Below, piece after piece: positions 1-45,113 of a stretch of DNA of 64,000 nt. The notes beneath the pieces were generated by a model. That model searched no databases. It was not told the origin of the DNA and saw nothing but the letters and a program-made list of their open reading frames with translations. The stretch is taken from positions 124,001 to 188,000 of the IMG/VR virus record IMGVR_UViG_3300032242_002454; one strand, 5' to 3'. Both the position numbers and the translations under genes were made by a program. Positions within the stretch are counted from its first letter, which is position 1. The number at the start of each line of letters is the position of its first letter.

Positions 1-1255
1 ACAATGTTATTAGTTGGGATTGGCAAAAACTTAAACTTACCAAAGATGAGATTGTGGGGCTGGCTAATTTTCTTAATCAGTTTGTGGAGGAAAACTAATG
101 GTAATTCAAAAAACTTGGACAGACCTTTTGGGAAAGCCTCAAGGTAATGAAAGTGTTGATGGGAAAGATATTGTGAGGGAAGTTAGTCCTCATCAATTTA
201 GAATACTGTGGTCATGCTGCACTAATAAAGAAGCTAATTGGATTTATACCTATTGGACAACTATGGAGAATAGCTAATGAAATGGAACATAGAACTTGTC
301 AAAGCAAAACACAGGTTTGAGACAGACCATTCATTAAACCAGCTATCATATTATGATACTATGTCAGATTGTTTGGTTCCTATGCTTGACGAGCCTTTGT
401 CTCCTAAATTAATTTTGCAAATGGAAGAATTTTCACAATCGGACAAGGGAATTGTATTCATGGATTATAAAACTCACAAAATAGGCTTAATAATTAATAA
501 CTGAAAAGATATACGGAGAAAACTAATGACTAGATTAAATTTGGATTTGACAACTAAACAGATCAATATTCTATTTAAGGCTTTGGAAAGTCTTGAGAAG
601 AATAATACTGTAGGAGATACTGAACTTAGTAGAGATATTGTTAAGTTGACAAGATATTTGGATAGTGTGGTGTTTGTTGAGAAATGGTATGTGGAGAATA
701 AATAATGACCTATAGTATAGTCTATGAATACGGAGAAGATCCAAATACTTCAATAAAATATATTAGAAATGAATATGGACTATTTTGCTCCAATGGTCGT
801 TTTTTAAGCAAATGGAGTAACCAAAATGGTTGGCTAGACATTACCACATTTATTGATTATACTCCTATTGAGCAAGTTGAGAGTATTACTAGAAAAATGT
901 TTGGAGAATAAATAATGGCTGGACTAGTATTGTTCGGTATATTAGGATATATGGCTTGTATACGAATTTATGATTGGTGGAATGGATATGGGGATTTATT
1001 TTAATGACTAAATCTGAATATAAGGCTTACCACTTTAAAGTTATCCAGTACATTTATGCAGAATATAGGGATTTTCATTTTAATAAGATGAAAAATGGAT
1101 CATTATTGATTCAATTAAATCCAATCGATAAACACCTATTTCATTTACTAATTAAAAATCTATACAATCCTAAAGATAGTATTAATAATATTGCTGGTAA
1201 TGTAATGGAAGAGATGTATCAACATTTATGGGGAATTTCTAAGATAAGGTCTTGA
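1..1255 (+). other. Run of small hypothetical early-type ORFs (277..504, 705..911, 1004..1255 and sub-60-aa ORFs between them)
   Basis: Tightly packed + strand ORFs with GGAG-type RBS and TAATG stop/start overlaps; no recognisable motifs. Confidence 0.7.
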
Positions 1256-1280
1256 CAACATCCGATAAGAATGGTATGCT
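1252..1280 (+). promoter_or_regulatory. sigma70-type promoter (class I)
   Basis: TTGACA-17-TATGCT, spacer contains CCGATA. Confidence 0.8.
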
Positions 1281-1300
1281 TACTGGCAAAGAGATAACTA

Positions 1301-1489
1301 ATGACTCTGCTAAGAACTCTGAATCTTGAATATGATACTATCGAGATTCATTATAATGAGCTTTTGAAAAATAAACCTTACTTGGTGAGGGTTTTCTCAT
1401 ATAATAATACTGATCCCAGCGAACTACGTCTGGACGAAAAAGAAGTAAAAAATCTATATCAAACCCTTAAAGAACATGAGCTATTATGA
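1301..1489 (+). CDS. hypothetical protein
   Basis: ORF directly after promoter. Confidence 0.7.
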   Translation: MTLLRTLNLEYDTIEIHYNELLKNKPYLVRVFSYNNTDPSELRLDEKEVKNLYQTLKEHELL

Positions 1490-1824
1490 AACCCATAATT
1501 CTAACGGATGAACAAGTGGCATCAATGCTGACTAGGGCATTTTACGAGGGTTTTAACTTCACTTGTGAAGGATTTAACGGAGAATGTGCATTTGACCATT
1601 TAGCCCCAGATGGATTGACGCTTGAGGAAAAGTCAGCTATTACCGTCAGAGAGATACTGTCAGATCATGATGCTAAACTAATGACTAAACCCATAATTTT
1701 AACGGATAAGGAAATTGAAGCAATTAAATGGTGTGTGGAGCAGTGGACGGGTATTAAACGAGCCGAAACTCTCCGTAATCTATTAGAAAGAATAAAGGAT
1801 AATGAAAACTTTAGTAGTAATTGA
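1486..1824 (+). CDS. hypothetical protein with shared LTDKEIEAI...TLRNLLER module
   Basis: KPIILTD occurs twice; C-terminal module shared with 2504..2734 and 3136..3492. Confidence 0.75.
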   Translation: MKPIILTDEQVASMLTRAFYEGFNFTCEGFNGECAFDHLAPDGLTLEEKSAITVREILSDHDAKLMTKPIILTDKEIEAIKWCVEQWTGIKRAETLRNLLERIKDNENFSSN

Positions 1825-2504
1825 AGTTGAAAACGAAATCGGCAACCCTTCTGCTCAAGATATAGAATTTTTTGTTAAACAAATCATAGAAAAAGGACTT
1901 GTTGGGAATTTTGACATACACAAGTATTGCCCAATGAGTGGTATATCGCTAAGAGTTTTAATAGCACTTCAAGCTGATAAAGATAGACTAAAGGGTCTTG
2001 CCGATTTTATCTATAAGTATTTGGTGAATAAATAATGAATAACCTACCAGAAATAGACAAAATATCAGTAATGAATCTGAAACCAGACGATATACTAGTT
2101 TTTAGTACCTATGATAAAATAGCTAGTAGTGTTTATTCAAGAATAGACCAAAAAATAACCGATTGGAAAGCCCAAAACAATATAAAAAACAAACATTTGA
2201 TACTAACTTCTCTAAAACTAGAAGTATTGTCAAAAGAACAAGTTGAAGGAGAAAAGAAATGACTGAACCTCTTAATGTTGGTCAAGAATTTATCAAAAGA
2301 CTCCGAAAATATAATGAGGGTACGATTCCTATTATGGGAGATATAGTAGGAATTGATGAATGGCGTAATGTTGCTATGAAAATTGGAGAAAAACTATCTT
2401 CAACAGGCCCGGATGATTACTATAATTTTACTCCACAACAATGGTTTGAGTGGGCAGATTCTCAGATAAATTCAAGATGGATTCCAAAAAGAAACAAAGG
2501 ATAA
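1802..2504 (+). other. three hypothetical ORFs (1802..2035, 2035..2262, 2259..2504)
   Basis: Overlapping start/stop coupling on + strand. Confidence 0.7.
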
Positions 2505-2734
2505 TGATGAATAAAAAATACGCCGTAACAGAGGGTGACACTCTGGCAAACATCCGAACTACAGATTCTTATCGTGAAATGCCAAATGGTCCGCCGCCTT
2601 CTTTATCTAAAAATGCAGAGATTAAGAGTTTGAAACTTACGGATAAAGAAATTGAGGCGATTGAGTGGTACGCAAATTTTCACGACGGGATACATCGTGA
2701 CACACTCCGCAATCTATTAGAAAGAACAAAGTAG
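2504..2734 (+). CDS. hypothetical protein with shared C-terminal module
   Basis: Ends LKLTDKEIEAIEW...DTLRNLLERTK; probable start ATG 2504 overlapping the upstream stop. Confidence 0.7.
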   Translation: MMNKKYAVTEGDTLANIRTTDSYREMPNGPPPSLSKNAEIKSLKLTDKEIEAIEWYANFHDGIHRDTLRNLLERTK

Positions 2735-2772
2735 ACCCAATGCTTACGGAACAGTTTCATTCAAGTTTGGTC

Positions 2773-2801
2773 TTGACAAGTGCCGATAAGTATGGTATAC
2801 T
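2773..2801 (+). promoter_or_regulatory. sigma70-type promoter (class I)
   Basis: TTGACA-17-TATACT, spacer GCCGATA. Confidence 0.85.
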
Positions 2802-2868
2802 AGATCAAATCTTAGAGATTTGATTGTATCAAAAAAATCAACAACGATAAATTGAGAGGAAAAAAAAT

Positions 2869-3129
2869 ATGTTCTCGCATAATGAAGCTAAAAACCTTAT
2901 TGTTAAAACTGTTGAAAATCTTCAAGGTTGCAAAGCTACTGAACTTGCAGCTAATCCCAAAATTGCAATTGAGGTTAGCAATCTTAATGAGCTTATTGAT
3001 GAGCTAATCCAAGAAGGAGATATAGTCGCCATAGAGTATGTTATCCCAAACCTGCCAGATAGAATTAAGATTTATTTGTTTCCACGAGGAACAAATTTTA
3101 AAAACTCAAAATCAGATTCAAAAATTTGA
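2869..3129 (+). CDS. hypothetical small protein, possibly winged-helix-like
   Basis: Pattern 'KATELA...LNELIDELIQEGDIV' suggests a wHTH; not confirmed. Confidence 0.5.
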   Translation: MFSHNEAKNLIVKTVENLQGCKATELAANPKIAIEVSNLNELIDELIQEGDIVAIEYVIPNLPDRIKIYLFPRGTNFKNSKSDSKI

Positions 3130-3135
3130 AGATAA

Positions 3136-3492
3136 ATGATGCACAAACACAGTATCTCTGCAATTAATACATTTGTTATTGAACCAATTGAAAACATTAC
3201 TATTTCATCCAATGAGATAGCTGGTGAAGGATATATTTTTACCATTAAGAATGGTTCATTTAATGAAAGTGTAACTTTTGGCTTAGATATAGAAGAAATA
3301 AAAACTTTTATTCATTATCTCAATAGTCTTATGCAAAAAATAACACCATCTAATAGTCTAGAAATTCTAACTTTGACAATTGACGAAAGACGAGCTATAG
3401 AGTATGCTAAAAAATGGGCATTAACGCTTCGTGATGGTGGTGTTATAGCAAAAACTCTTCAATCTTTATTAGAAAGAACAAAGGATAAATAA
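3136..3492 (+). CDS. hypothetical protein with shared C-terminal module
   Basis: Ends LTLTIDERRAIEY...KTLQSLLERTKDK. Confidence 0.75.
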   Translation: MMHKHSISAINTFVIEPIENITISSNEIAGEGYIFTIKNGSFNESVTFGLDIEEIKTFIHYLNSLMQKITPSNSLEILTLTIDERRAIEYAKKWALTLRDGGVIAKTLQSLLERTKDK

Positions 3493-4477
3493 TGGAAATT
3501 CAAAATAAGAAAGAGATTACTCTAAGTGTTAAAGATGTTCAAGATATTATTTTTGATCATTTAACAAGACAATATAGGCTTGATGGGGATTTTAATTTTG
3601 ACTTTGTTGTTATCAATAAACCATACCCATGCGGAATTCACGATGCTTGTGATCGTTATGAATTTGATGGGGTAAAGATTGTGGTGACTCATGAGTAAAT
3701 TTCTAGACAATCAAAAAGCACAAGATATGACTGTGACTCTAATACTTTTTGGAGTAGTGATAGTTCTCACAGCTTTTTCAATGTTTATTCTTAATCCTAT
3801 TCATAAAAAGAATATAGAAAAGCTAAAAAACAAACCAATAGACAGACAGAAGATTATTATTGACAATATTGCTGGTACTGTAGAAAGTATTCATCCTTGG
3901 GGACGCACAGAAGTTGTTCCTATAAATGGGATAGAATTAGAATACTTTGAATATTGTGATCAGTGGGTTATGTACGGAGATGTAGTTCAACCAATTGGTC
4001 GTAAAGGTTATTTTATGCCGGTCATGAGAGGCAGACTAAATCTTGACGTTAAAGATTTTACCCAAACATGGATTGAATATGGTGGTTACGAAACTGGTTC
4101 CTTAGAAAAACCAGAAACCTATGAGGACTTTAGATTAGCCCACATAAAAGTAAAACTAGGGGAAATTACCAAAGTAGAATATACTCACTACAGACTATTA
4201 CCAAATAATATTTGGAGTATAATCTCTTCGTGGGAGTCAAAATCTAATGAAACCAATTGAAGTTGGATTTGATGGAAGTTTTGATATAACTTCTGGTCAT
4301 GTAGGGCCACTAAAGATAAGACTAACTAGAAGTGGTTCAAATCCTAAAGATTGGATAAACCCACCTATTGACAACACATTCATCTGGTTGTATACTGACA
4401 AGGACAACCCAGAGTTGTTATACAAGAATAAAGATGGTAAACTTTATAGCGTCAATTTTGAACCTTTTGGGGAATAA
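3492..4477 (+). other. three hypothetical ORFs (3492..3698; 3691..4260 with an N-terminal TM helix; 4247..4477)
   Basis: Coupled ORFs; hydrophobic stretch VTLILFGVVIVLTAFSMFIL. Confidence 0.7.
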
Positions 4478-4480
4478 TTC

Positions 4481-4861
4481 GTGATCGGTTTAAATATACG
4501 GTCGCCTTGGTCTACCCTTTTAATTAATGGTCAGAAAACGGTCGAAACCCGCTCCTATCGACTTCCCACAAGATTAGAGGGAGTTGAGTTGGCACTTATT
4601 GAAACTCCGGGGAAATCGGCTAAGTTTAAGAGTAGAATTATCGGAACAATTACTTTTAGTGATTGTATTCAGTATTCCTCTAAAGAACAGTGGGAATCTG
4701 ATGAGAGTAGACATAAGGTGAGTATTGAGGATAGGACTTATGGTTGGAAAGATAAGCCTAAGTTTGGATGGATCGTACAATCAGTCAAAAAATTTAAAAA
4801 TCCCATTGACCCTCCTGCTAAACGTGGTATAATTTACGCTAGAGATTGTAACATTTCTTAG
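4481..4861 (+). CDS. ASCH-domain protein
   Basis: GLNIRSPWSTLLINGQKTVETR matches the ASCH (PUA-like) GxKxxExR motif. Confidence 0.85.
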   Translation: MIGLNIRSPWSTLLINGQKTVETRSYRLPTRLEGVELALIETPGKSAKFKSRIIGTITFSDCIQYSSKEQWESDESRHKVSIEDRTYGWKDKPKFGWIVQSVKKFKNPIDPPAKRGIIYARDCNIS

Positions 4862-4871
4862 GAGAAATAAA

Positions 4872-5489
4872 ATGGATAACTATAATCAAGACTTTATGAT
4901 TTCAGCTAATAAATGTGCTAAATTCATATATAATGATCCTATTCAAAAAGAATCATATGAATCCCATATTCATCTTGGACACAATCCAAGAGATCATATT
5001 TATTTTGATGCTGCCTATGTATTAAACAAAGATGATGAACTGGATATTGACATTAACTATTATCAAGAAATCACTAATAGCTAGGAGTTTAAATGAGTTG
5101 GGTTTTTATTGTGGCTAGAGGATCAACAGTTGAAAGAGTTAAAGTCTTTAATGACTATTTTGCAGGCGAGGCTTATACTAGCGAATATCTTAGGATAGAA
5201 TTTGGGGTCAATGAAGTTGATTTCCCAGAATATCGTAAGGGGGAATATTATCAAAATGCTGATTCTGGAGTAAGTGTGGGTCTTTATAAGGATAACTCCT
5301 AAAATGGAAAAGTTAATTAATCTGTTCCCTCTTTTCCTCATTATTTTTGTTGTAACATTTTTATCTTATCAATCTGAATACAAGTCAGAAAAATGTGAAG
5401 TAAGAATTAGACAGGATAAGTCGGTATGTTTTTGTAATGGATTAAGCGTTCAATCAGAGAAACAATGTCCTACCATGAATGATTTGTAA
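4872..5489 (+). other. hypothetical ORFs (4872..5084, 5093..5302, small membrane protein ending at 5489)
   Basis: ORF track, RBS-preceded. Confidence 0.65.
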
Positions 5490-5497
5490 AGTGCCTG

Positions 5498-5525
5498 TTG
5501 ACAAACGCCGATAACGTAGTATACT
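5498..5525 (+). promoter_or_regulatory. sigma70-type promoter (class I)
   Basis: TTGACA-16-TATACT, spacer GCCGATA. Confidence 0.8.
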
Positions 5526-5549
5526 TAGGGCATCCTTTGGAGAAACTTT

Positions 5550-5714
5550 ATGAGTCCAACAGTTCAACAAAAAGTTCAAGATTTAATTGATAAGTATTTC
5601 ATTGGTCAGAACAACTATGAATTGTCTATCAAACAAGACAACCTAGATAAATTCTTGTCAGAATACAACAAGATTATTATTACTCGTACTGTGGAAGTTT
5701 GCGGTCTACACTAA
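5550..5714 (+). CDS. small hypothetical protein (54 aa, below track cutoff)
   Basis: GGAG RBS, MSPTVQQKVQDLIDKY...VCGLH*. Confidence 0.65.
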   Translation: MSPTVQQKVQDLIDKYFIGQNNYELSIKQDNLDKFLSEYNKIIITRTVEVCGLH

Positions 5715-5728
5715 TTATTGGAGAAAAT

Positions 5729-6046
5729 ATGACAGTTCAAGAATTGCGTAATTGCGGATATAAGGTTAGGGTTCTTCATAATCGTCTTTACAATGGCTAT
5801 TATAAATGGCAAGTAGGCAGCAAGCCTGCGGAGGGTTATGGCTATGGGCCTATTGATCCAGATACTAAAGGTGGTTCAACTCAAATTATAATTGATAGTC
5901 CTCATGGCAGTCACTATGAGGGACTAGCTATTTGCAGTAAGAAAGAGAACTATAATAAGAAATTGGGCGTTAGAATTGCTCTTGGACGATGTAATGTCAA
6001 CCAAACTTTTTATACCCAATATTCTCAAATAAAGGAAGAAAAATGA
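5729..6046 (+). CDS. hypothetical phage protein
   Basis: AICSKKENYNKKLGVRIALGR resembles a common phage 'CS.KD.FNKK.G..IA..R' family. Confidence 0.6.
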   Translation: MTVQELRNCGYKVRVLHNRLYNGYYKWQVGSKPAEGYGYGPIDPDTKGGSTQIIIDSPHGSHYEGLAICSKKENYNKKLGVRIALGRCNVNQTFYTQYSQIKEEK

Positions 6047-6207: not shown

Positions 6208-6729
6208 GAGTTTTGAAGATTTGATGAAAAAAACTTGTTCCAAAGATGTTATCATTGATGGATATAGAAGAACTATGAATTACTTATCTGAATATATTGG
6301 TATGCCCGATCTATTTAAAAGTAGCGATATAATTCTTCCTGCTGGTTTTAGCCCAAAGAAAACTACAAAGTTTTTCCAACCCTGTATTACTATTACAAAA
6401 ACAACCACACATTTTAGTCCACCCAAAAGGCGTGATCCTTCACGACGTTGGAAATGAGAACATTTAAAGAAGAAGTAAGAAAAGTCCTTGATGATATAAA
6501 TTGTGATGTTTGTGGGAAAAGTACAACCAACTATAAAGAAGTTGGGCCAGACTTTGCTACTCTTGAATCATATTGGGGATATGGTTCAACTAATGATGGA
6601 TCAAAATACGAGATTCATATTTGTGAAAATTGTTTTGATGAGACACTAGATTTCCTAAAACAAAAAAGAAAGAGCATCTTGGGGCCGTTCAGTTATCCTT
6701 TCGATAATGACCCTTTGGATGGAGTATGA
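6200..6729 (+). other. two hypothetical ORFs (6200..6457; 6448..6729 with CDVC/CENC zinc-binding pairs)
   Basis: ORF track; CxxC pairs. Confidence 0.65.
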
Positions 6730-7337
6730 ATAATAGTATTACTCTCATTGGTGATGTTCATGGTAAATATAAACATTATCATGAAATAATTAGAGAAAAA
6801 GATCGTCATCCATATACTATTCAGTTGGGTGATTTTGGTTTTAATTACGAAACATTAAAGAATGTAGACCCTACTAAACATAAAATTATTGGAGGTAATC
6901 ATGACAATTACAGTAGCATTAATGATAGCCCTAATTACCTTGGTAATTGTGGGTACTCATGTTTGAATGGTGTTAAATTTTTCTATTATAGAGGTGCTTA
7001 TAGCATTGATCGTGCAAATAGAACCATAGGTATAGACTGGTGGGAAGATGAACAGGTTACTATTGATCAATTTATGAAAGCTAGAGAGCTTTATAGAGAA
7101 GTAAAACCAGACATTGTTTTAACTCATGATTGTCCAGATGAAGTTAGCTTGAGAATACTAGATAGAAATCAAAGAAAATATGAGAACCTAACAGGATGGG
7201 CTTTGCAAGAGCTATTTAATATTCATCAACCTAAAATATGGCGATTTGGTCATTATCATAAGAGTTGGAACTTAAATATAAGTGGTACAGACTTTAAATG
7301 TTTAAACGAGTTGGAAACTGAGCTATTGACAGTTTAG
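6726..7337 (+). CDS. calcineurin-like metallophosphoesterase
   Basis: GDVHG, GDFG, GGNHD, THDCP, FGHYH motifs. Confidence 0.9.
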   Translation: MNNSITLIGDVHGKYKHYHEIIREKDRHPYTIQLGDFGFNYETLKNVDPTKHKIIGGNHDNYSSINDSPNYLGNCGYSCLNGVKFFYYRGAYSIDRANRTIGIDWWEDEQVTIDQFMKARELYREVKPDIVLTHDCPDEVSLRILDRNQRKYENLTGWALQELFNIHQPKIWRFGHYHKSWNLNISGTDFKCLNELETELLTV

Positions 7338-7472: not shown

Positions 7473-8576
7473 ATGAATGAAATAGAAAAAGCTAATATAC
7501 TTGAAATCATAAAGTTATGTAATCGAAAGATTAAAGAACAAAAAGATCATGAGTCTACTTCTGGATATGGAGAAGATTATAATGATGGTAGGATTGTTGG
7601 TGGTGCGGCATTAGCAAGAAGAATTCTGACTATATTAAAATATGTTGAACTTTGATTATGACTGAATTACCAGATAGTAAAATTCCTTGGTGGGATAATC
7701 ATTACGAAGATATTTATAGTGAAGAAATAGAAGATGGATATCCTTATGATATGGGAACTAAAGTACAGGAATAAATTATGAACGAGTCAGTTAATCAAGC
7801 TATTTGTGATTTCTATAATAGCGTTTGGAATTACATGAAACAGGAATATAAACCAAAGTGGGCAAGAATGTATAATGCTCAAAAGACTTTGGATGAAATG
7901 ATTCAGATTACTGGGCAATATTATCTTGGTGGTAATACTGTTCCTAATACTGCTGGGGATATTATAGCCTTTTTGAAAAAGAAAAAGCAATGAGTTATTC
8001 TGAGTTTAGAAATAAAATTGATAATGACTTAAAGAAATATCAACTACGATATGGTCAAACTGTTATGAATTGTTTGGCTGAAGTTTGGCCTAAAAAACAT
8101 AAAGAGTTTGTTGCCACAGACCTTGATTGTTTTTATAATGACAAGAAGGCAGATAGACTATTGAATCATTTAGAAAAGATATGGGAACATGAATCAGACT
8201 GATAAAAATAATCCTTTCTTTGATATTGATACTTATATCAATCATCTAGAAAAAACAATAGAAGAGCAAAAGAAAAAGATAGAATCTCTTGAAATTCAAA
8301 TTGCTAGTTTGAATGTAGAATATTTATTAGATAGATAACTTAATGGAGAATTAAATCATGAAAGATAAGTTAGAAGTTTTTAGTATTGGAACTGATATTA
8401 AGTTGGCCGAAGATGTTTTTGGTAAAGTTACTGGAATCAATATTCGTGGAAATAATTCAGTTTCTTATGAGGTTGGTTGGTGGAATGGACGAAGTTATGA
8501 TTGCAAGTATTTTGCAGATCATGAGCTTGAGTCCACATTATCTACAACTAAGCAAAAAATTGGTTTTTCCTCATGA
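7473..8576 (+). other. hypothetical ORFs (7473..7655, 7778..7993, 7990..8202, 8358..8576 and shorter ones between)
   Basis: ORF track, coupled. Confidence 0.7.
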
Positions 8577-19540: not shown

Positions 19541-19958
19541 AAAAATTTGCATTTACTGTGGTAAAAGGAAAAATGCCAAGTCTTTTGCTAGACATATTGG
19601 ACATAAAGATAATCTGGACAGTAGATGCAGAAAGTGCGTTAAACAACATACTAAGATTAGAAATAAACTAAGGAAAAAGGCTCCTCAAAAGCCAGATGGT
19701 TGTGAGTGTTGTTTTTGTAGTCCAGATAAATGGCACCTAGATCATGACCATGTTTATCATACCTTTAGGGGATGGTTATGTGAAACTTGTAATATAGGGA
19801 TAGGAAAATTAGGAGATAATTTAGAAGGTATTGTTGCTGCTTTGAAATATTTATCAGTAAGAAGTAAGGTTGAAGATCAAGCTGTGCTAAATCACATTAT
19901 TCAAGGCGTGGTTTTTTCTTTAAACCATTTGCTAGAGAAAAGACGAAATGATGCTTGA
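19533..19958 (+). CDS. recombination endonuclease VII-like protein
   Basis: CECC...HLDHDH...RGWLCETCNIGIGKLGDN. Confidence 0.88.
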   Translation: MSRKICIYCGKRKNAKSFARHIGHKDNLDSRCRKCVKQHTKIRNKLRKKAPQKPDGCECCFCSPDKWHLDHDHVYHTFRGWLCETCNIGIGKLGDNLEGIVAALKYLSVRSKVEDQAVLNHIIQGVVFSLNHLLEKRRNDA

Positions 19959-20008
19959 CAACAGCATTACCGTATGCTATACTTGGGAAAACACAGGAGA
20001 AATTGGAA

Positions 20009-21307
20009 ATGTCATTTGAGCATCTTAATGGTTTTGTTCGTGATCTGAAAGCAACTAGTAGTACACTTGATAAAGTTGGAATTATTGAGGATTATACCTC
20101 TTCCAATCAGGCTGGAGCAGATTTTATCAAAAAGATTTTGCTCTATACTTATCATCCTCTTTGGCAGTATAATGTGACCAGCGATAATCTCAAAAAGAAA
20201 TCTTCACTCAGAGGACAATCTTTTAAGACTGTTTTTGATTTGCTAGATTCTTTGAAGAACAGAGAAATCACAGGTCACGATGCTATTGGAGCAGTTAATA
20301 CTTTTATTGACAATAATGGATACGAAGAACTCATCCACTGTATTATTGATAAGGATTTGAAAACCCGTGCTGGAGATAAGTTAATCAATAAGGCTATTCC
20401 AGATCACATTCCAACATTTAGCGTTGCATTAGCGGACAAGTATGTTCCTAAAATTGTAGACTGGAAGGATGGATGGTATGTTAGCAGGAAGATCGACGGT
20501 GCTAGATGTATTGCTATTGTTGACAGTAATGGTAATACTACCTTTTATTCCCGCACGGGAAAAAACTTTGATACTCTTGACGTTGTTAGCGGTGGGATTA
20601 AAGCTTTGGGACTTACTAATGTAATTCTTGATGGAGAACTTTGTCTTGTTGATGAAGATGGTAATGAGGATTTTCAAGGAGTAATGAAAGAACTTCGCAA
20701 GAAGGATCATACTATTCCTAATCCTTCATATAAGATTTTTGATATGATTACTCATGATGAATTTTATAGTCAGAAGGGAGAACATAATAGACCCTTTGGT
20801 ATCAGACTCAAGAATCTTACAGAAGTTATGAAAAAGAATGAATGTCCATGCCTAACACTATTGGATCAGTCCTTGATTAAGGACGAAAACCATTTTCAAG
20901 AATTTGTCAAAGAATCTACTCAGAATGGTTGGGAGGGACTTATGCTTCGTGCAGATACTCCTTATAAGGGTAAGCGATCAAAAGACCTTCTCAAATATAA
21001 ATCATTCTTTGATGACGAATATGAAGTTCTAGATACTGAAATGGGGCCGTTCCGCTATGTTAAAGATGGTGCAGAGTGCGAGGAGATTATGTTGAGTTGT
21101 GTTATGATTCAACATAAGGGTCATACTGTCAGGGTTGGTTCTGGTTTTAGTATTGATCAAAGACAAGAGTTTTATAAGAATCCTAAGAAGATTTTGGGCA
21201 AAATAATTACTGTCCAATACTTTGAAGAAACAGAAAATGAAAAGGGTGGTATTAGCCTAAGATTTCCGACATTTAAAATTTTGCATGGGGATGAGAGGGA
21301 TATTTGA
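20009..21307 (+). CDS. ATP-dependent DNA ligase
   Basis: SRKIDGARC (KxDG), LDGEL, EGLML, DLLKYK, SLRFP; AGGAG RBS favours ATG 20009. Confidence 0.95.
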   Translation: MSFEHLNGFVRDLKATSSTLDKVGIIEDYTSSNQAGADFIKKILLYTYHPLWQYNVTSDNLKKKSSLRGQSFKTVFDLLDSLKNREITGHDAIGAVNTFIDNNGYEELIHCIIDKDLKTRAGDKLINKAIPDHIPTFSVALADKYVPKIVDWKDGWYVSRKIDGARCIAIVDSNGNTTFYSRTGKNFDTLDVVSGGIKALGLTNVILDGELCLVDEDGNEDFQGVMKELRKKDHTIPNPSYKIFDMITHDEFYSQKGEHNRPFGIRLKNLTEVMKKNECPCLTLLDQSLIKDENHFQEFVKESTQNGWEGLMLRADTPYKGKRSKDLLKYKSFFDDEYEVLDTEMGPFRYVKDGAECEEIMLSCVMIQHKGHTVRVGSGFSIDQRQEFYKNPKKILGKIITVQYFEETENEKGGISLRFPTFKILHGDERDI

Positions 21308-29888: not shown

Positions 29889-32579
29889 ATGAAGTTGGCA
29901 GATAGGACGATTGAGACTCACAGCGTTGGTGTTGCAAGTAGGAACCAATTCAATATCGCTCAGACGAGCAAGATGTTTAAAATCCTTTCAGACTCTCTTT
30001 ATTCTGATAAGGTAATGGCAGCAATTCGTGAGCTTTCTACTAATGCTTATGATAGTCATATCTCTGCTGGGAATAGGAATCCTTTTAAGGTTACTCTGCC
30101 CACCGCTGCTAATCCTACCTTTATGGTGAGAGATTATGGTACTGGTCTTAGTCAGGCCGATATGGAGGACTTGTATACAACTTATGGTGCCTCAAACAAA
30201 AATGATAGCAATGATTTTGTTGGTTGTCTTGGTCTAGGGTCTAAGAGTCCGTTTGCCTACACCAAGAGCTTCACCACTGCATCATATTACAATGGTAAGA
30301 AATATACCTATATTGCAGCAATTGATGAGAGTGGTGTTCCTACTCTGAATCTTTTTAATACTGCCGAAACATCTGAGCCTAATGGTCTTGAGATTAGTTT
30401 TGCTGTTAAGCAGCATGACTTTCAAGAGTTCACCGATAAGGCTAAGAGAATTTTCCACTACTTCCGAATGAAACCCATCATTGAGGGTGGTGTTGGTGGT
30501 AATCTTATGGATCATAAGTATAGCAATACCAATATCGTTATTAGTGGTGAGGGTTGGAGAGTTTGCCGACTCAATAATGATAACAGTTATTTTCCCAGCA
30601 ATTATCATCGAATTGATAGTGGTATCATCGCTATCATGGGAAATATTGCGTATCCTGTTCAAACCGCACAGATTGTTGGTCAAGAAAAGGAAGAAATGCC
30701 CGACCATATTCAGAAGTGGAATAGGGCTTTCCAGAAAGCAGATATTGATTCTTGGAAGAGTTTTGTGGGAGAGATTCTTAACTCTGGTCTTTATCTTGAA
30801 CTGGATTTTGGTATCGGTGAACTTGAGATGGACGTTAGCCGCGAAGGTTTGCAGTATACCAAGGATGTAATTAAGGCTCTTCGTAAAAAGACCCAAGAAA
30901 TTTACATGGAGATGAAGGAAGAATTCTCCAAGAAAATTCAAGCATCCAAGACCAAGGTAGAAGCAATTACTTCATATTATACTATGAATGAATTGGCTGG
31001 CGGCTGGGGTGTTGGTGCCACTTGGACTGATCCCAAGGGTAAAGATCATCCGATCAATTCTGGAAATGATTTGGAATATAAAATTCCGGCTGGCAAGAGT
31101 CTGTATGTTTTTAACTATAAGACTGCTGGCTATCGTTCTCGTCGTCAAGTTGCTTTGACAGATAAGATTCATCACGAAACTCTTACTGGTAAAGGTTCTT
31201 ACTATTGGAATAACCAGAGGAAGAAAGGCACGATGGCTTTCTTTATCTGTGACGTTAAGGGTGAAGAAACAGCAAAGAAGATCATCACAAAGTATTGCAA
31301 TAGTAATGATTGTTTTGCCTACTTGATGCTTGATACTAAGGACTATACCAAGAGTGGAGAAGGTTTTGATAAGCTGATCGAAGATGTTGGATCTGAAAAT
31401 CTGCTCAAGGTTTCAGACTACAAACATCTTACTCAAAGTTCTGGCCCAAGAAAGTCTTACAATAGAAATTCTAATGGTAGTGTTAGTGATCAAGACGTAT
31501 TCTTTATTCATGGCTATGATGATGATAGTAAGCAGATTACTAATCCTTATAACGATGCTACTTGTCTAAGAATTCTTTCAGAAGAACAACTGGAAGATTT
31601 TCTAGAGCAGGATGAGATAGTGTACGTTCCTATGCTTCGATATAAGACTGAGGCTGAATCCGGTCATCCTGAGATTAGTGATATTACCACTACTCTTGGT
31701 GATGATAGCTTGAAGTTTATAGTCAAGGATTTGCTGGGAGATAGTAAGATTTATGCTATCAAAAACGCTTTTGTTAAAAAGCTTCAAAATGATGGGTATA
31801 ATCTTGTCAGTTTTAATGAATTCTTTAAGCGTCAGTTGAAGATTGTTGCTCAGAAACATTTTTCAAGTTTGGCTTCTTTCAATGATCTTGTTGAGTTCTG
31901 TAAGAAAGAATATGCAAGCGAAGAACATAAGAACAACCAATATAGATATTATAATCATGGAACTATGGATAAACAGTTCATGTTTCATATGTTGAATATC
32001 TTTGGGTTGAATTATGAAAAGTTTATTGGTAGTAAGACTCTGGTTGAGTGCATAGACACTACTATGCTTATGGAATTCTTTGCTAATACTGTTCATGATA
32101 ATAACTTTAGGATTGAAAGATTTTCTCAATCAGATTATTTCTCTCATATCTCAAGGTTAATGGACAAGGTTAATATCCGATCAGTAGACAGTAAAGATAT
32201 TCGTAAGGCTAGTTTGGCTTACAATGTCTTGACTAGTCTGATTAGTGGATCACTTTATACTGGATCTAATTCTCATAAAGCTGAAACTTATCTGAAAATT
32301 ATTAAGGGTGAGTCTAAGGAAAACTTTAAACTACCAGCAATCTCTAAGATTAGAGAGAGTGTCAGAACTGAACTTGATAAGAACCCTATGCTAAAGTATA
32401 TTCTTGGTAGTCATCAAGTTACTGGAACTCTTACTGATCTAAGAGCTAAGAAGAATCCTATTAATCAGCTTGATGAACGTCATTCCTATTATAATAATGA
32501 TGGTAAGGATTGGATCATGCAGATGAGCCAAGAGAATATTGACCTATTTAGAATTCAGTTGAGTAGTTTAGTCAAGTAG
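29889..32579 (+). CDS. rIIA: RIIA-like protein (GHKL/HSP90-type ATPase N-terminus)
   Basis: LSDSLYSDK...IRELSTNAYD, VRDYGTG, GCLGLGSKSPF; adjacent rIIB. Confidence 0.88.
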   Translation: MKLADRTIETHSVGVASRNQFNIAQTSKMFKILSDSLYSDKVMAAIRELSTNAYDSHISAGNRNPFKVTLPTAANPTFMVRDYGTGLSQADMEDLYTTYGASNKNDSNDFVGCLGLGSKSPFAYTKSFTTASYYNGKKYTYIAAIDESGVPTLNLFNTAETSEPNGLEISFAVKQHDFQEFTDKAKRIFHYFRMKPIIEGGVGGNLMDHKYSNTNIVISGEGWRVCRLNNDNSYFPSNYHRIDSGIIAIMGNIAYPVQTAQIVGQEKEEMPDHIQKWNRAFQKADIDSWKSFVGEILNSGLYLELDFGIGELEMDVSREGLQYTKDVIKALRKKTQEIYMEMKEEFSKKIQASKTKVEAITSYYTMNELAGGWGVGATWTDPKGKDHPINSGNDLEYKIPAGKSLYVFNYKTAGYRSRRQVALTDKIHHETLTGKGSYYWNNQRKKGTMAFFICDVKGEETAKKIITKYCNSNDCFAYLMLDTKDYTKSGEGFDKLIEDVGSENLLKVSDYKHLTQSSGPRKSYNRNSNGSVSDQDVFFIHGYDDDSKQITNPYNDATCLRILSEEQLEDFLEQDEIVYVPMLRYKTEAESGHPEISDITTTLGDDSLKFIVKDLLGDSKIYAIKNAFVKKLQNDGYNLVSFNEFFKRQLKIVAQKHFSSLASFNDLVEFCKKEYASEEHKNNQYRYYNHGTMDKQFMFHMLNIFGLNYEKFIGSKTLVECIDTTMLMEFFANTVHDNNFRIERFSQSDYFSHISRLMDKVNIRSVDSKDIRKASLAYNVLTSLISGSLYTGSNSHKAETYLKIIKGESKENFKLPAISKIRESVRTELDKNPMLKYILGSHQVTGTLTDLRAKKNPINQLDERHSYYNNDGKDWIMQMSQENIDLFRIQLSSLVK

Positions 32580-43574: not shown

Positions 43575-44005
43575 GTATAGATTTTTTACAAGATTTTCCT
43601 ATTAAAGTAGGACTATCTGCCATAGAGGGTAGAGGTATCTTTTCTACTAAAGAAATTAAAGAAGGAGATCTTATAGAAAGATGCCCTATGGTTCCTTTGG
43701 CTTTTAGATCTAGATATCATTCAGATCCTCAAATATATAAGTATTTGTATTCTCAACCAACTTGTCCATGTAATGAATGCAAGGTTCATGGTTTTAAATT
43801 TTATATGGTATTAGGATATGGAATGCTTTATAATCATCAAGATGATCCTAACACAGAATGGCAATTTGATTTTCCTAATCTAGTAGCAGACATTATGGCT
43901 ATAAAAAATATTCCAGCAGGAAATGAAATTTTTGTAGATTATGGCACCAAATATTTTAATGATCAACCAAAAATAGAAAATAAAGATAATGCAAAAAATA
44001 ATTAA
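43571..44005 (+). CDS. SET-domain protein (copy 2)
   Basis: EGRGIFS, YNHQDDPN, EIFVDY. Confidence 0.9.
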   Translation: MSIDFLQDFPIKVGLSAIEGRGIFSTKEIKEGDLIERCPMVPLAFRSRYHSDPQIYKYLYSQPTCPCNECKVHGFKFYMVLGYGMLYNHQDDPNTEWQFDFPNLVADIMAIKNIPAGNEIFVDYGTKYFNDQPKIENKDNAKNN

Positions 44006-45113
44006 TGAAATTAAGCTTGATTTTGATGATGTTCTTATCAAACCCAAAAGATCAGCTTTAAATAGTAGATCTGAGGTAACTTTAGTTAGAGAATTTAATT
44101 TTTCTAATTCAACAAGAAAATTGTCTTGTGTGCCAATTATGGTGGCTAATATGGATACTACTGGAACTTTTAGTATGACTGATCCAGTCTGTTCAGCACA
44201 GAGCATAGTGTGTTTACACAAGCATTATTCTATAGAACAGTTGACATCTTTTTATTCTACTGATACTAATATAGATAAAGATCTTGTTTTTTATTCTACG
44301 GGAACGTCTGCAAAAGATCTTGAAAAACTAAAAGAGGTTTTTAACTCATTACTTTATATAGGCAAAAAAGTTCCTAATGTTTGTATTGATGTTGCAAATG
44401 GTTATAGTGAAAAATTTGTAAAAATAACCAGTCATATTCGTGGACTATATCCAGATATTGTAATTATGGCTGGCAATGTAGTAACCCCAGAAATGGTTGA
44501 AGAATTAATACTCCATGGCAGAGTGGATATTGTTAAAGTAGGAATAGGATCAGGCTCAGTCTGCACTACTAGACTAAAAACTGGAATAGGCTATCCTCAA
44601 TTGGCAGCAGTAATGGAATGTACCGATGCTGCTCATGGATTAGGTGGTCATATTTGTTCTGATGGTGGATGCAAGATAGTTGGAGATGTTTGTAAAGCAT
44701 TTGGTGCTAATGCAGATTTTGTAATGCTAGGTAGTATGTTTGCTGGTACTGATGAATGTGAAGGAGAATGGGAATATGAGTTTAAATGTAAAAGAGCTGG
44801 CTTAACATCTGAATTTTGGCAACCATTTAACCCCGGTTATGAAACAGAAAAGAAAAAAACTAAACTTAAGTTCTATGGTATGAGTTCTAAAAACGCTATG
44901 GATAAATATCATAATGGGATTGCAAACTATAGAACTAGCGAGGGAAAATGCGTTACTATTCCTTACAAAGACAAAGCAGAAGTAATCCTACAAGATATTC
45001 TTGGTGGTATTAGAAGCGCTTGCACTTACGTAGGAGCTTCTAAAATTAAGGATTTTGGCAAAAAAACTACTTTTATTCAGGTTAACAATACTCATAATAG
45101 GATTTTTGAATGA
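43989..45113 (+). CDS. guaC: GMP reductase
   Basis: LDFDDVLIKP, ANMD, DVANG, AGNV, GIGSGSVCTTR, SDGG, GSMFAG, FYGMSS. Confidence 0.93.
   Translation: MQKIINEIKLDFDDVLIKPKRSALNSRSEVTLVREFNFSNSTRKLSCVPIMVANMDTTGTFSMTDPVCSAQSIVCLHKHYSIEQLTSFYSTDTNIDKDLVFYSTGTSAKDLEKLKEVFNSLLYIGKKVPNVCIDVANGYSEKFVKITSHIRGLYPDIVIMAGNVVTPEMVEELILHGRVDIVKVGIGSGSVCTTRLKTGIGYPQLAAVMECTDAAHGLGGHICSDGGCKIVGDVCKAFGANADFVMLGSMFAGTDECEGEWEYEFKCKRAGLTSEFWQPFNPGYETEKKKTKLKFYGMSSKNAMDKYHNGIANYRTSEGKCVTIPYKDKAEVILQDILGGIRSACTYVGASKIKDFGKKTTFIQVNNTHNRIFE

What the first reader, a model, noticed from the sequence alone, without database searches (positions are those of the whole stretch)
1486..3492. Otherwise unrelated early proteins share one ~35-aa C-terminal module
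Three ORFs with different N-termini end in the same module: 1486..1824 (KPIILTDKEIEAIKW...AETLRNLLERIKD), 2504..2734 (LKLTDKEIEAIEW...RDTLRNLLERTK) and 3136..3492 (LTLTIDERRAIEY...AKTLQSLLERTKDK). The similarity is visible at DNA level (ctccgtaatctattagaaaga vs ctccgcaatctattagaaaga). ORF 1486 also starts with a second KPIILTD. Inference: this is a plug-in two-helix address tag (docking to a common host complex, oligomerisation, packaging or degradation signal) shuffled onto varied payloads, i.e. a possible modular effector system.
Basis: partly seen in the sequence, partly recalled or inferred. Interest (0 to 1): 0.68.

Follow-up and report, generated by a model that had tools for sequence, protein, structure and literature searches.

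The report
New phage helical-hairpin mini-domain family
Three small genes of a 205-kb uncultured phage end in the same ~35-residue two-helix module, an undescribed mini-domain found in hundreds of phage protein clusters; it can be a whole 39-residue protein, its last codons carry the next gene's ribosome site, and it acts as a recombination joint, so no address-tag role is shown.

Summary
ORFs 1486-1824, 2504-2734 and 3136-3492 share a C-terminal module: LTDxExEAIEW, an insert, then TLRxLLERTK. E-values are 1e-16 to 1e-25 among the genome's own six-frame ORFs, and there are only these three copies.

A profile of the module finds 358 protein clusters, all seen so far in phage-like contigs of 32-64% GC. 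None is in Pfam, PHROGs, NCBIfam or PDB, and there is essentially none in 596 Gb of cellular genomes.

AlphaFold2 models it as helix-loop-helix (pLDDT about 90). Synonymous sites are saturated between GC classes while residues are kept, so selection acts on the protein.

The three window copies are three old subtypes, each with its own conserved insert. A relative carries a free-standing 39-aa module gene at the position of ORF 1486. Large phage records hold 1-4 clustered copies.

The module sits at gene ends because its last codons double as the Shine-Dalgarno site and overlapping start of the next gene. Rearrangements between relatives break at its conserved blocks.

Shuffling of a two-helix module is supported. 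An address tag on effectors is not. Function is inferred only: a self-contained association hairpin.

The parts
1486..1824 (+). Gene p1 (112 aa): 66-residue N-part plus an m1-type module
   Evidence: In relative L011 the syntenic gene is the 39-aa module alone.
1699..1797 (+). Module m1, from LTD to ERIK; insert subtype WCVEQWTGIK
   Evidence: The same insert type occurs in Ala/Arg-rich phage proteins P0052, P0094, P0127 and in locus L021.
1489..1509 (+). First copy of a 21-nt direct repeat encoding KPIILTD; second copy at 1687-1707. The pair brackets the 66 extra codons of p1.
   Evidence: family D3
1687..1707 (+). Second copy of the 21-nt KPIILTD repeat, at the start of module m1
1802..2035 (+). 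Downstream gene. Its ATG lies inside the p1 tail. Its N-domain is fused to the module in relatives (P0005, P0007; L003 7150-7455).
2504..2734 (+). Gene p2 (76 aa): N-part modelled with low confidence plus an m2-type module
2636..2731 (+). Module m2, from LTD to ERTK, then stop; insert subtype WYANFHDGIH, the commonest subtype
   Evidence: AlphaFold2: helix 47-57, loop 58-64, helix 65-75, pLDDT about 90.
3136..3492 (+). Gene p3 (118 aa): ORFan N-domain plus an m3-type module
   Evidence: The N-domain is found only in its own cluster.
3373..3489 (+). Module m3 plus tail DK; insert subtype YAKKWALTLRDGGV
   Evidence: Counterparts in Ala/Arg-rich proteins P0085, P0113, P0153, P0156.
3467..3494 (+). 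Junction: end of module m3, AAGGAT Shine-Dalgarno-like site, TAATG stop/start overlap with gene 3492-3698. 100% identical to junctions in L003; close to window 1771-1802.
1761..1802 (+). 3' conserved block of m1. Direct repeat with 2695-2736 and 3447-3488. Recombination joint that bounds the 1.7-kb block 1803-3492, which is absent at this place in L001.
   Evidence: family D1

Best explanation
The module is a self-contained helical-hairpin mini-domain of an undescribed, phage-restricted protein family. Its parts are:
- helix 1: LTDxEREAIEW;
- a subtype-specific insert; the stretch between the cores LTxxExxAI and LRxLLER measures 14-43 residues;
- helix 2: TLRxLLER, followed by 2-4 residues and the stop.

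Shown:
1. It is under protein-level purifying selection across phages of 32-64% GC.
2. It exists as a complete 39-aa gene product as well as at the end of longer small proteins.
3. The window carries three different ancient subtypes side by side.
4. Its last codons are also the translation start region of the next gene. In high-GC phages this is a GGAG/AGGA-type site plus an ATGA or GTGA stop-start overlap; in this phage it is AAGGAT plus TAATG. This explains why the protein nearly always ends just after the module.
5. Its two conserved coding blocks are the places where related phages differ by insertions, deletions and chimeras. Recombination at the copies swaps upstream payloads and downstream genes while keeping reading frames and translational coupling.

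Inferred: two 11-residue helices cannot bury a core alone, so the hairpin most likely works by pairing. It could pair with itself, with another subtype or with a partner helix pair to form a small helical bundle. The N-terminal parts would then be neighbouring small genes or insertions fused to it, rather than cargo addressed by it.
For: - Family size and position: 358 clusters at E<=1e-3. The module is C-terminal in 130 of 148.
- Contexts are arrays of small same-strand genes in phage contigs.
- Absent from the INPHARED phage records by tblastn.
- Only 1 exact-pattern hit in 596 Gb of cellular genomes, on a phage-like MAG contig.
- No Pfam, PHROG, NCBIfam or PDB family.
- AlphaFold2 hairpin, pLDDT about 90.
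- pS 0.92 versus pN 0.24 between low- and high-GC copies.
- Stand-alone 39-aa gene at the syntenic place in L011.
- Three subtypes, each with high-GC counterparts.
- Start-region evidence, high-GC copies: 38 of 54 have an ATGA/GTGA overlap, and 44 of 54 have exactly 2 residues after LLER. The last Arg uses AGR in 24 of 54, against 2 of 96 at the two other conserved Arg positions (Fisher p 7e-11).
- Other genes in the same loci also end in ...LExxx-stop, with CTGGAG as the ribosome site. The window's general junction GGAGAATAAATAATG resembles the module tail.
- Breakpoints: window 1291-1689 matches L001 at 97% and stops at the module start. Window 1771-1802 and 3467-3494 both match the single L001 junction at 7743-7774. 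Block 1803-3492 is absent there.
Against: - No binding or oligomeric state is shown. The homodimer prediction was below the mark (no verdict).
- The four-helix model of a high-GC member has pTM 0.43, so packing is unclear.
- Gene boundaries in general are breakpoints in these phages, so the module may be a passive rather than a preferred joint.
- pN is biased downward, because copies were collected by a protein motif.
- Codon identity between distant copies is somewhat above expectation. The low-GC copies keep CTC CGY at Leu-Arg against the genome's preference. Some nucleotide-level constraint or shared descent therefore remains unexplained.
Confidence: 0.5

Rival explanations
1. Address or docking tag. 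The hairpin brings varied N-terminal payloads to one host or phage complex, or marks them for packaging or degradation.
For: Strong C-terminal bias on many different N-parts. Conserved charged residues (E, R, E ... R, E, R) that could form a docking face.
Against: Only 1-4 clustered copies per genome. Stand-alone forms exist, including the syntenic 39-aa gene. Tandem modules occur within one protein. Three subtypes have different conserved inserts. No recognisable effector domains among 55 members. The tail after the module varies from 0 to 12 residues, which does not fit a C-terminal degron. The C-terminal position is explained by the embedded start region.
Confidence: 0.2
2. DNA-binding regulator domain, either ribbon-helix-helix-like or a helix-turn-helix remnant, that autoregulates the strongly transcribed small genes.
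For: Weak hits to DUF6290 (E 0.076). NikA-like (E 0.0022) and Sigma70_r4 (E 0.0002) each in 1 of 55 members. An LTxxE start resembles the strand-to-helix junction of such domains (own reading).
Against: AlphaFold2 gives no strand before helix 1, and the preceding residues are often helical. Profile searches of PDB find no such protein. All hits lie far below curated cut-offs. Fold searches find nothing specific.
Confidence: 0.08
3. Purely nucleotide-level element: a recombination linker plus ribosome-site cassette whose coding sense is incidental.
For: Breakpoints lie at the blocks. Codon choice at the last Arg is set by the ribosome site. Some excess codon identity between distant copies.
Against: Synonymous sites are saturated between GC classes while residues are kept. 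The 5' block and the subtype inserts are conserved as protein in phages of 33% and over 60% GC. There is no special RNA pairing.
Confidence: 0.05
4. Encapsulated-ferritin-like hairpin that forms a metal-bridged dimer.
For: Recurrent weak hits of the m2 type to EncFtn models: Pfam E 0.003, TIGR04535 E 0.0035, EncB_fam E 0.0039. EncB appears low in both fold lists. Glu and His residues are conserved in the commonest subtype.
Against: Scores are 12-17 bits against cut-offs of 27-125. The match is not reciprocated by profile search of PDB. Other subtypes lack the His. There is no encapsulin context.
Confidence: 0.04

Closest known systems
PeSL cassettes (promoter-early stem-loops) that mediate modular shuffling in hyperplastic regions of T4-type phages (PMC2839356; PMC4122927)
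   Same: Short conserved repeats scattered among small non-essential genes. Exchange between copies explains insertions, deletions and replacements between close relatives. The repeat also carries expression signals for the next gene.
   Different: PeSLs are intergenic sigma-70 promoters with terminator stem-loops. Here the repeat is coding, is selected as a protein, carries a ribosome site and overlapping start rather than a promoter, and shows no special RNA structure. A separate repeated promoter cassette does exist nearby (1248-1280 and 2769-2801).
Translationally coupled overlapping genes (ATGA / TAATG junctions with the Shine-Dalgarno site inside the upstream gene): established knowledge
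   Same: The stop of the module gene overlaps the next start. The ribosome site lies in the last codons, and codon choice there is bent toward GGAG/AGGA.
   Different: Here one conserved protein module supplies the junction again and again in very different phages, so protein end and junction travel together.
Small alpha-hairpin proteins that pair into four-helix bundles, such as ColE1 Rop or encapsulated ferritin monomers (own knowledge; a lead, not a test)
   Same: Two short amphipathic helices joined by a loop, too small to fold alone.
   Different: No sequence or fold match above noise. Pairing is not shown. The helices are about half as long as in Rop.
Domains of unknown function in phage accessory regions (Pfam DUFs, PHROGs)
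   Same: Small, phage-restricted, mosaic, with no known function.
   Different: This module is in none of the four libraries searched. Only the neighbouring FAAAAL-type N-module of high-GC members matches PHROGs 2201, 20565 and 37111.

Membership tests
Ribbon-helix-helix (CopG/Arc/MetJ, DUF6290, NikA-like) | Match to a family model above its cut-off | tested here: not met
   DUF6290 E 0.076 (13.7 bits, cut-off 27). NikA-like in 1 of 55 members at E 0.0022.
Ribbon-helix-helix (CopG/Arc/MetJ, DUF6290, NikA-like) | N-terminal beta-strand before helix A that pairs in a dimer | tested here: not met
   The AlphaFold2 model has no strand: residues 43-46 are coil and 36-42 are helical. No such chain appears in PDB profile or fold searches.
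Encapsulated ferritin (EncFtn / EncB) | Family model score above cut-off over the roughly 100-residue domain | tested here: not met
   12-17 bits over about 30 positions, against cut-offs of 27, 90 and 125.
Encapsulated ferritin (EncFtn / EncB) | Metal-binding Glu/His site and an encapsulin partner | not testable with these tools
   Glu and His are conserved only in the commonest subtype. No encapsulin gene was seen in any locus.
PeSL regulatory cassette | Intergenic sigma-70 promoter plus terminator stem-loop | tested here: not met
   The repeat lies inside coding sequence. No promoter or terminator call falls on it. RNA pairing is no different from control junctions.
PeSL regulatory cassette | Repeat copies bound the indels and replacements between close relatives | tested here: met
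   Window 1771-1802 and 3467-3494 both match one junction in L001, and block 1803-3492 is absent there. Chimeras break inside the module.
Sigma-70 region 4 / LuxR-type helix-turn-helix | Family model match with a recognition helix | tested here: not met
   Only 1 of 55 members hits Sigma70_r4 (E 0.0002). The module is about 20 residues too short and has two helices.
C-terminal degradation tag (ssrA-like or ClpX C-motifs) | Fixed terminal residues at the free C-terminus | tested here: not met
   The tail after LLER varies from 0 to 12 residues and in sequence: TK, LK, LG, IKDK, IKDNENFSSN.
Any curated protein family (Pfam-A, PHROGs v4, NCBIfam 20, PDB sequences) | Significant match of the module | tested here: not met

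The most novel reading that the evidence does not exclude
The hairpin is a bundle-forming assembly tag with subtype-specific inserts. A phage carries a set of different subtypes (here m1, m2, m3) whose hairpins pair with one another. This would tie the products of adjacent, translationally coupled small genes into one hetero-oligomer as they leave the ribosome: a plug-in assembly system for early accessory proteins, renewed by recombination at the tag.
Probability: 0.1. Interest if true: 0.7.

Novelty: new member of a known kind. Interest (0 to 1): 0.45.

Why it matters
This gives a name and a boundary to a widespread piece of phage dark matter: 358 clusters with no annotation.

It shows a clean case where the end of a protein is shaped jointly by protein function and by the next gene's ribosome site.

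It adds a coding counterpart to the intergenic cassettes known to drive gene shuffling in T4-type hyperplastic regions.

If the hairpin proves to be a pairing unit, it would be a very small natural association tag, and a handle for working out what the many attached ORFan segments do.

Tried and rejected
- Homodimer prediction of p2 with a 132-row alignment: score 0.30 and 0.14, mark 0.42. No verdict; not used as evidence either way.
- Foldseek against PDB: nothing at E<=0.001. VIA wide search: best Z 3.1, only generic helical repeats.
- ESM Atlas feature search: scores of 0.80, which is noise level.
- Ribbon-helix-helix, helix-turn-helix and EncFtn leads: see the membership tests.
- RNA structure hiding the ribosome site at module junctions: pairing 0.57 versus 0.59 in 154 control junctions, p 0.51. 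The stretch after p2 folds no better than shuffles (z 0.48).
- Recent DNA transfer between GC classes: rejected, since pS is 0.92.
- Literature search for the motif strings: no paper.
- AlphaFold2 of a high-GC member with an N-terminal FAAAAL hairpin, to see whether the two hairpins pack: four helices, but pTM 0.43, so inconclusive.
- Search for the N-domain of p3 elsewhere: only its own cluster.
- A Gp23 capsid family search of the own genome rang nowhere, including the controls, so it says nothing about lineage.

Full report
SETTING. The window is bases 124,001-188,000 of a single 204,625-bp virus record with direct terminal repeats, rated 100% complete. GC content is about 33%. The record carries an rIIA-like gene, an ATP-dependent DNA ligase and an IMPDH/GMP-reductase-like gene in the window. 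Giant ORFs of 4,023 and 5,022 aa, the sort of size seen in fibre genes, lie on the other strand outside it. No record in the INPHARED collection is close at the DNA level. The first 8 kb of the window are tightly packed small + strand ORFs, nearly all without any family match.

OBSERVATION. ORFs 1486-1824 (p1, 112 aa), 2504-2734 (p2, 76 aa) and 3136-3492 (p3, 118 aa) align only over their last 35-45 residues. The shared pattern is LTDKEIEAIEW, a variable stretch, then TLRNLLERTK. Alignment scores are 2-5 times the shuffle mean and above every one of 2,000 shuffles. A profile of the module finds exactly these three ORFs in the whole genome, at E 3e-16 to 3e-25. The quoted DNA identity and the second KPIILTD at the start of p1 are both real. 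One caveat: the N-parts of p1 and p3 share a weak 28-residue similarity (E 0.019).

HOW WIDE THE FAMILY IS. A word-index search with the p2 module returned 17 proteins of 65-129 aa. All carry the module at the C-terminus behind different N-parts, and several are Ala/Arg-rich as in high-GC genomes. A 13-sequence profile run against 1.84 billion cluster representatives found 358 clusters at E<=1e-3 and 38 at E<=1e-10. A few giant repeat proteins match only short fragments and are unrelated. Of 148 listed proteins with a full module, 130 have it within 8 residues of the C-terminus. Most exceptions carry a second module at the end. About one in ten is little more than the module (39-60 aa).

Every context inspected is an array of small same-strand genes in phage-like contigs of 6-381 kb and 32-64% GC. 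Phage genes such as denV-type endonuclease, dUTPase and methyltransferases lie nearby.

The module is absent from the following:
- Pfam, PHROGs, NCBIfam and PDB sequences;
- the deposited phage genomes, by tblastn;
- the paper library, as motif strings.

In 596 Gb of bacterial and archaeal genomes, a back-translated pattern for LTDxEREA[IV]EW hits once. That hit is on an 8.5-kb contig of a lake MAG which itself looks like phage and carries two tandem module genes. The family therefore appears restricted to uncultured, probably non-temperate, phages.

WHAT THE MODULE IS. With a 132-row alignment, AlphaFold2 models p2 as follows:
- an N-part modelled with low confidence (pLDDT 47-58 over the first 30 residues);
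- helix 47-57 (DKEIEAIEWYA);
- loop 58-64;
- helix 65-75 (RDTLRNLLERT).
The module has pLDDT about 90. The nearly invariant residues are L, T, E, R and A in helix 1 and T, L, R, L, L and R in helix 2.

Over the two conserved blocks, the proportion of synonymous differences between low-GC and high-GC copies is 0.92, which is saturated. The non-synonymous proportion is 0.24. Selection is therefore on the protein, although collecting copies by a protein motif biases the second figure downward.

The stretch between the blocks is not random. The three window copies carry three different inserts: WCVEQWTGIK, WYANFHDGIH and YAKKWALTLRDGGV. Each has clear counterparts in Ala/Arg-rich phage proteins. 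One 57%-GC contig, L021, carries an m1-type and an m3-type copy in consecutive genes. The window therefore holds three old paralogous subtypes, not three pastes of one tag.

WHY IT SITS AT THE END OF GENES. I collected 76 distinct module DNA copies from 48 loci. The 54 high-GC copies show this pattern:
- 44 end exactly two residues after LLER;
- 38 have a stop that overlaps the next start as ATGA or GTGA.

Typical ends are GAAAGGACAAAATGA and CTGGAGAGGACGAAATGA. Each reads as a GGAG/AGGA-type ribosome site, a short A-rich spacer and the next ATG.

The last Arg is encoded by AGR in 24 of 54 copies. The two other conserved Arg positions of the same module use AGR in 2 of 96 (Fisher p 7e-11). The background share in these loci is about 0.2. 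Other overlapping genes in the same loci also tend to end in ...LExxx-stop, with CTGGAG as the site.

In the low-GC relatives the tail is usually TKDK or IKDK, and the junction reads AAGGATAAATAATG. This is a version of the general junction GGAGAATAAATAATG that recurs in the window at 687-708, 897-918 and 2017-2038. p3 is coupled in this way to gene 3492-3698. p1 has a shortened junction, so the ATG of gene 1802-2035 lies inside its tail. p2 ends at a 134-nt gap that holds a strong promoter-like site at 2773-2801. RNA folding gave no sign that these junctions are specially structured.

HOW IT GETS SHUFFLED. blastn of window 1-6000 against relatives of 90-98% identity shows a mosaic.
- Window 1291-1689 matches L001 at 97%, and the match stops at the first base of the module.
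- Window 1771-1802 and 3467-3494 both match one junction in L001 (7743-7774).
- In L001 the p1-like gene is followed directly by the homologue of window gene 3492-3698.

The six-gene block 1803-3492 therefore behaves as an insertion or deletion bounded by direct repeats of the module's 3' block.

In L003 and L008 the N-domain of window gene 1802-2035 is fused to a module. P0016 joins the p2 N-part to an m1-type module. P0001 joins the start of gene 2035-2262 to p2.

In L011, a complete 238-kb relative, the gene after the ORF 1301-1489 homologue is a 39-aa stand-alone module. Window p1 has the same start, followed by 66 extra codons flanked by a 21-nt direct repeat.

This behaviour parallels the PeSL cassettes of T4-type phages (PMC2839356; PMC4122927). 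The difference is that the repeat here is coding. Gene ends in general are breakpoints in these phages, so I cannot say the module is preferred over other ends.

COPY NUMBER. Five large phage records (168-381 kb) hold 1-4 copies each, always within about 2 kb. The window genome holds three copies within 2 kb.

FUNCTION. Nothing computed here shows what the hairpin binds. The homodimer job returned no verdict. Fold and feature searches are at noise level. The weak hints to ribbon-helix-helix, sigma region 4 and encapsulated ferritin fail their membership tests.

My best inference is a pairing hairpin that completes a small helical bundle with itself, another subtype or a partner. I give it about even odds as part of the overall account. 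It rests on four points: the helices are too short to fold alone; the family includes free-standing 39-aa proteins; tandem modules occur within one chain; and different subtypes co-occur.

It is weakened by the low and clustered copy number, the stand-alone forms, the lack of recognisable payload domains and the simpler explanation for the C-terminal position.

LIMITS. The host, the timing of expression and the sampled environment are unknown. The only environmental hint is the lake origin stated in the title of the single MAG hit.

Noticed in passing
window 1248-1280 and 2769-2801: A 33-nt repeat at 85% identity. It holds a near-consensus sigma-70 promoter (TTGACA, 17 nt, TATGCT or TATACT, with TG before the -10) in the two largest intergenic gaps of the region. 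Only these two copies exist in the window, against 0 expected. It may be this phage's counterpart of the PeSL promoter cassette. No convincing stem-loop lies beside the second copy.
   Followed up: partly
window 687-708, 897-918, 2017-2038: A conserved gene junction, GGAGAATAAATAATG (ribosome site, TAA, overlapping ATG), is shared by genes that lack the module. It resembles the module's AAGGATAAATAATG tail.
   Followed up: partly
loci L005 3146, L006 4523, L007 2884; proteins P0017, P0026, P0044, P0084 and others: In high-GC phages the gene that starts at the module's ATGA often begins MTDRDxFAAAAL. This is a second conserved module matching PHROGs 2201, 20565 and 37111 (unknown function). Together with EPVAW...PLYR and IERLR segments it forms a mosaic network: 103 of 139 N-parts are linked by BLAST.
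   Followed up: partly
L049 (contig JBIKJV010000338.1 of a Phycisphaerales MAG), 1-1500: This 8.5-kb MAG contig carries two tandem module genes and a nuclease-like small gene. It looks like phage DNA binned into a bacterial MAG.
   Followed up: no
window 2705-2713, 1771-1779 and the low-GC loci L001-L029: In all low-GC copies that keep Arg in TLR, it is encoded by CGT or CGC (16 of 16), and the Leu before it is CTC or CTT. The genome prefers AGA (0.60) and TTA (0.32). This may reflect shared descent or a nucleotide-level constraint; it is unexplained.
   Followed up: partly
window 29889-32579; 19955-21307; 43989-45113; 6726-7337: Four annotated genes: an rIIA-like protein (32-38% identity to T4-type rIIA), an ATP-dependent DNA ligase, an IMPDH/GMP-reductase-like gene, and a metallophosphoesterase (phrog_1649).
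   Followed up: partly
genome 80,766-82,457 and 86,609-88,174, minus strand (L048), outside the window: Two proteins start with the Mtd_N domain (major tropism determinant N-terminus). One also carries phage tail repeats. I did not check whether a diversity-generating retroelement is present.
   Followed up: no
window 3-98 (frame open at the window start) and genome 123,477-123,653: Two further ORFs contain LKLTKDEI or LLTDKEI starts that resemble helix 1 of the module but are not significant (E above 1). They may be decayed copies.
   Followed up: partly
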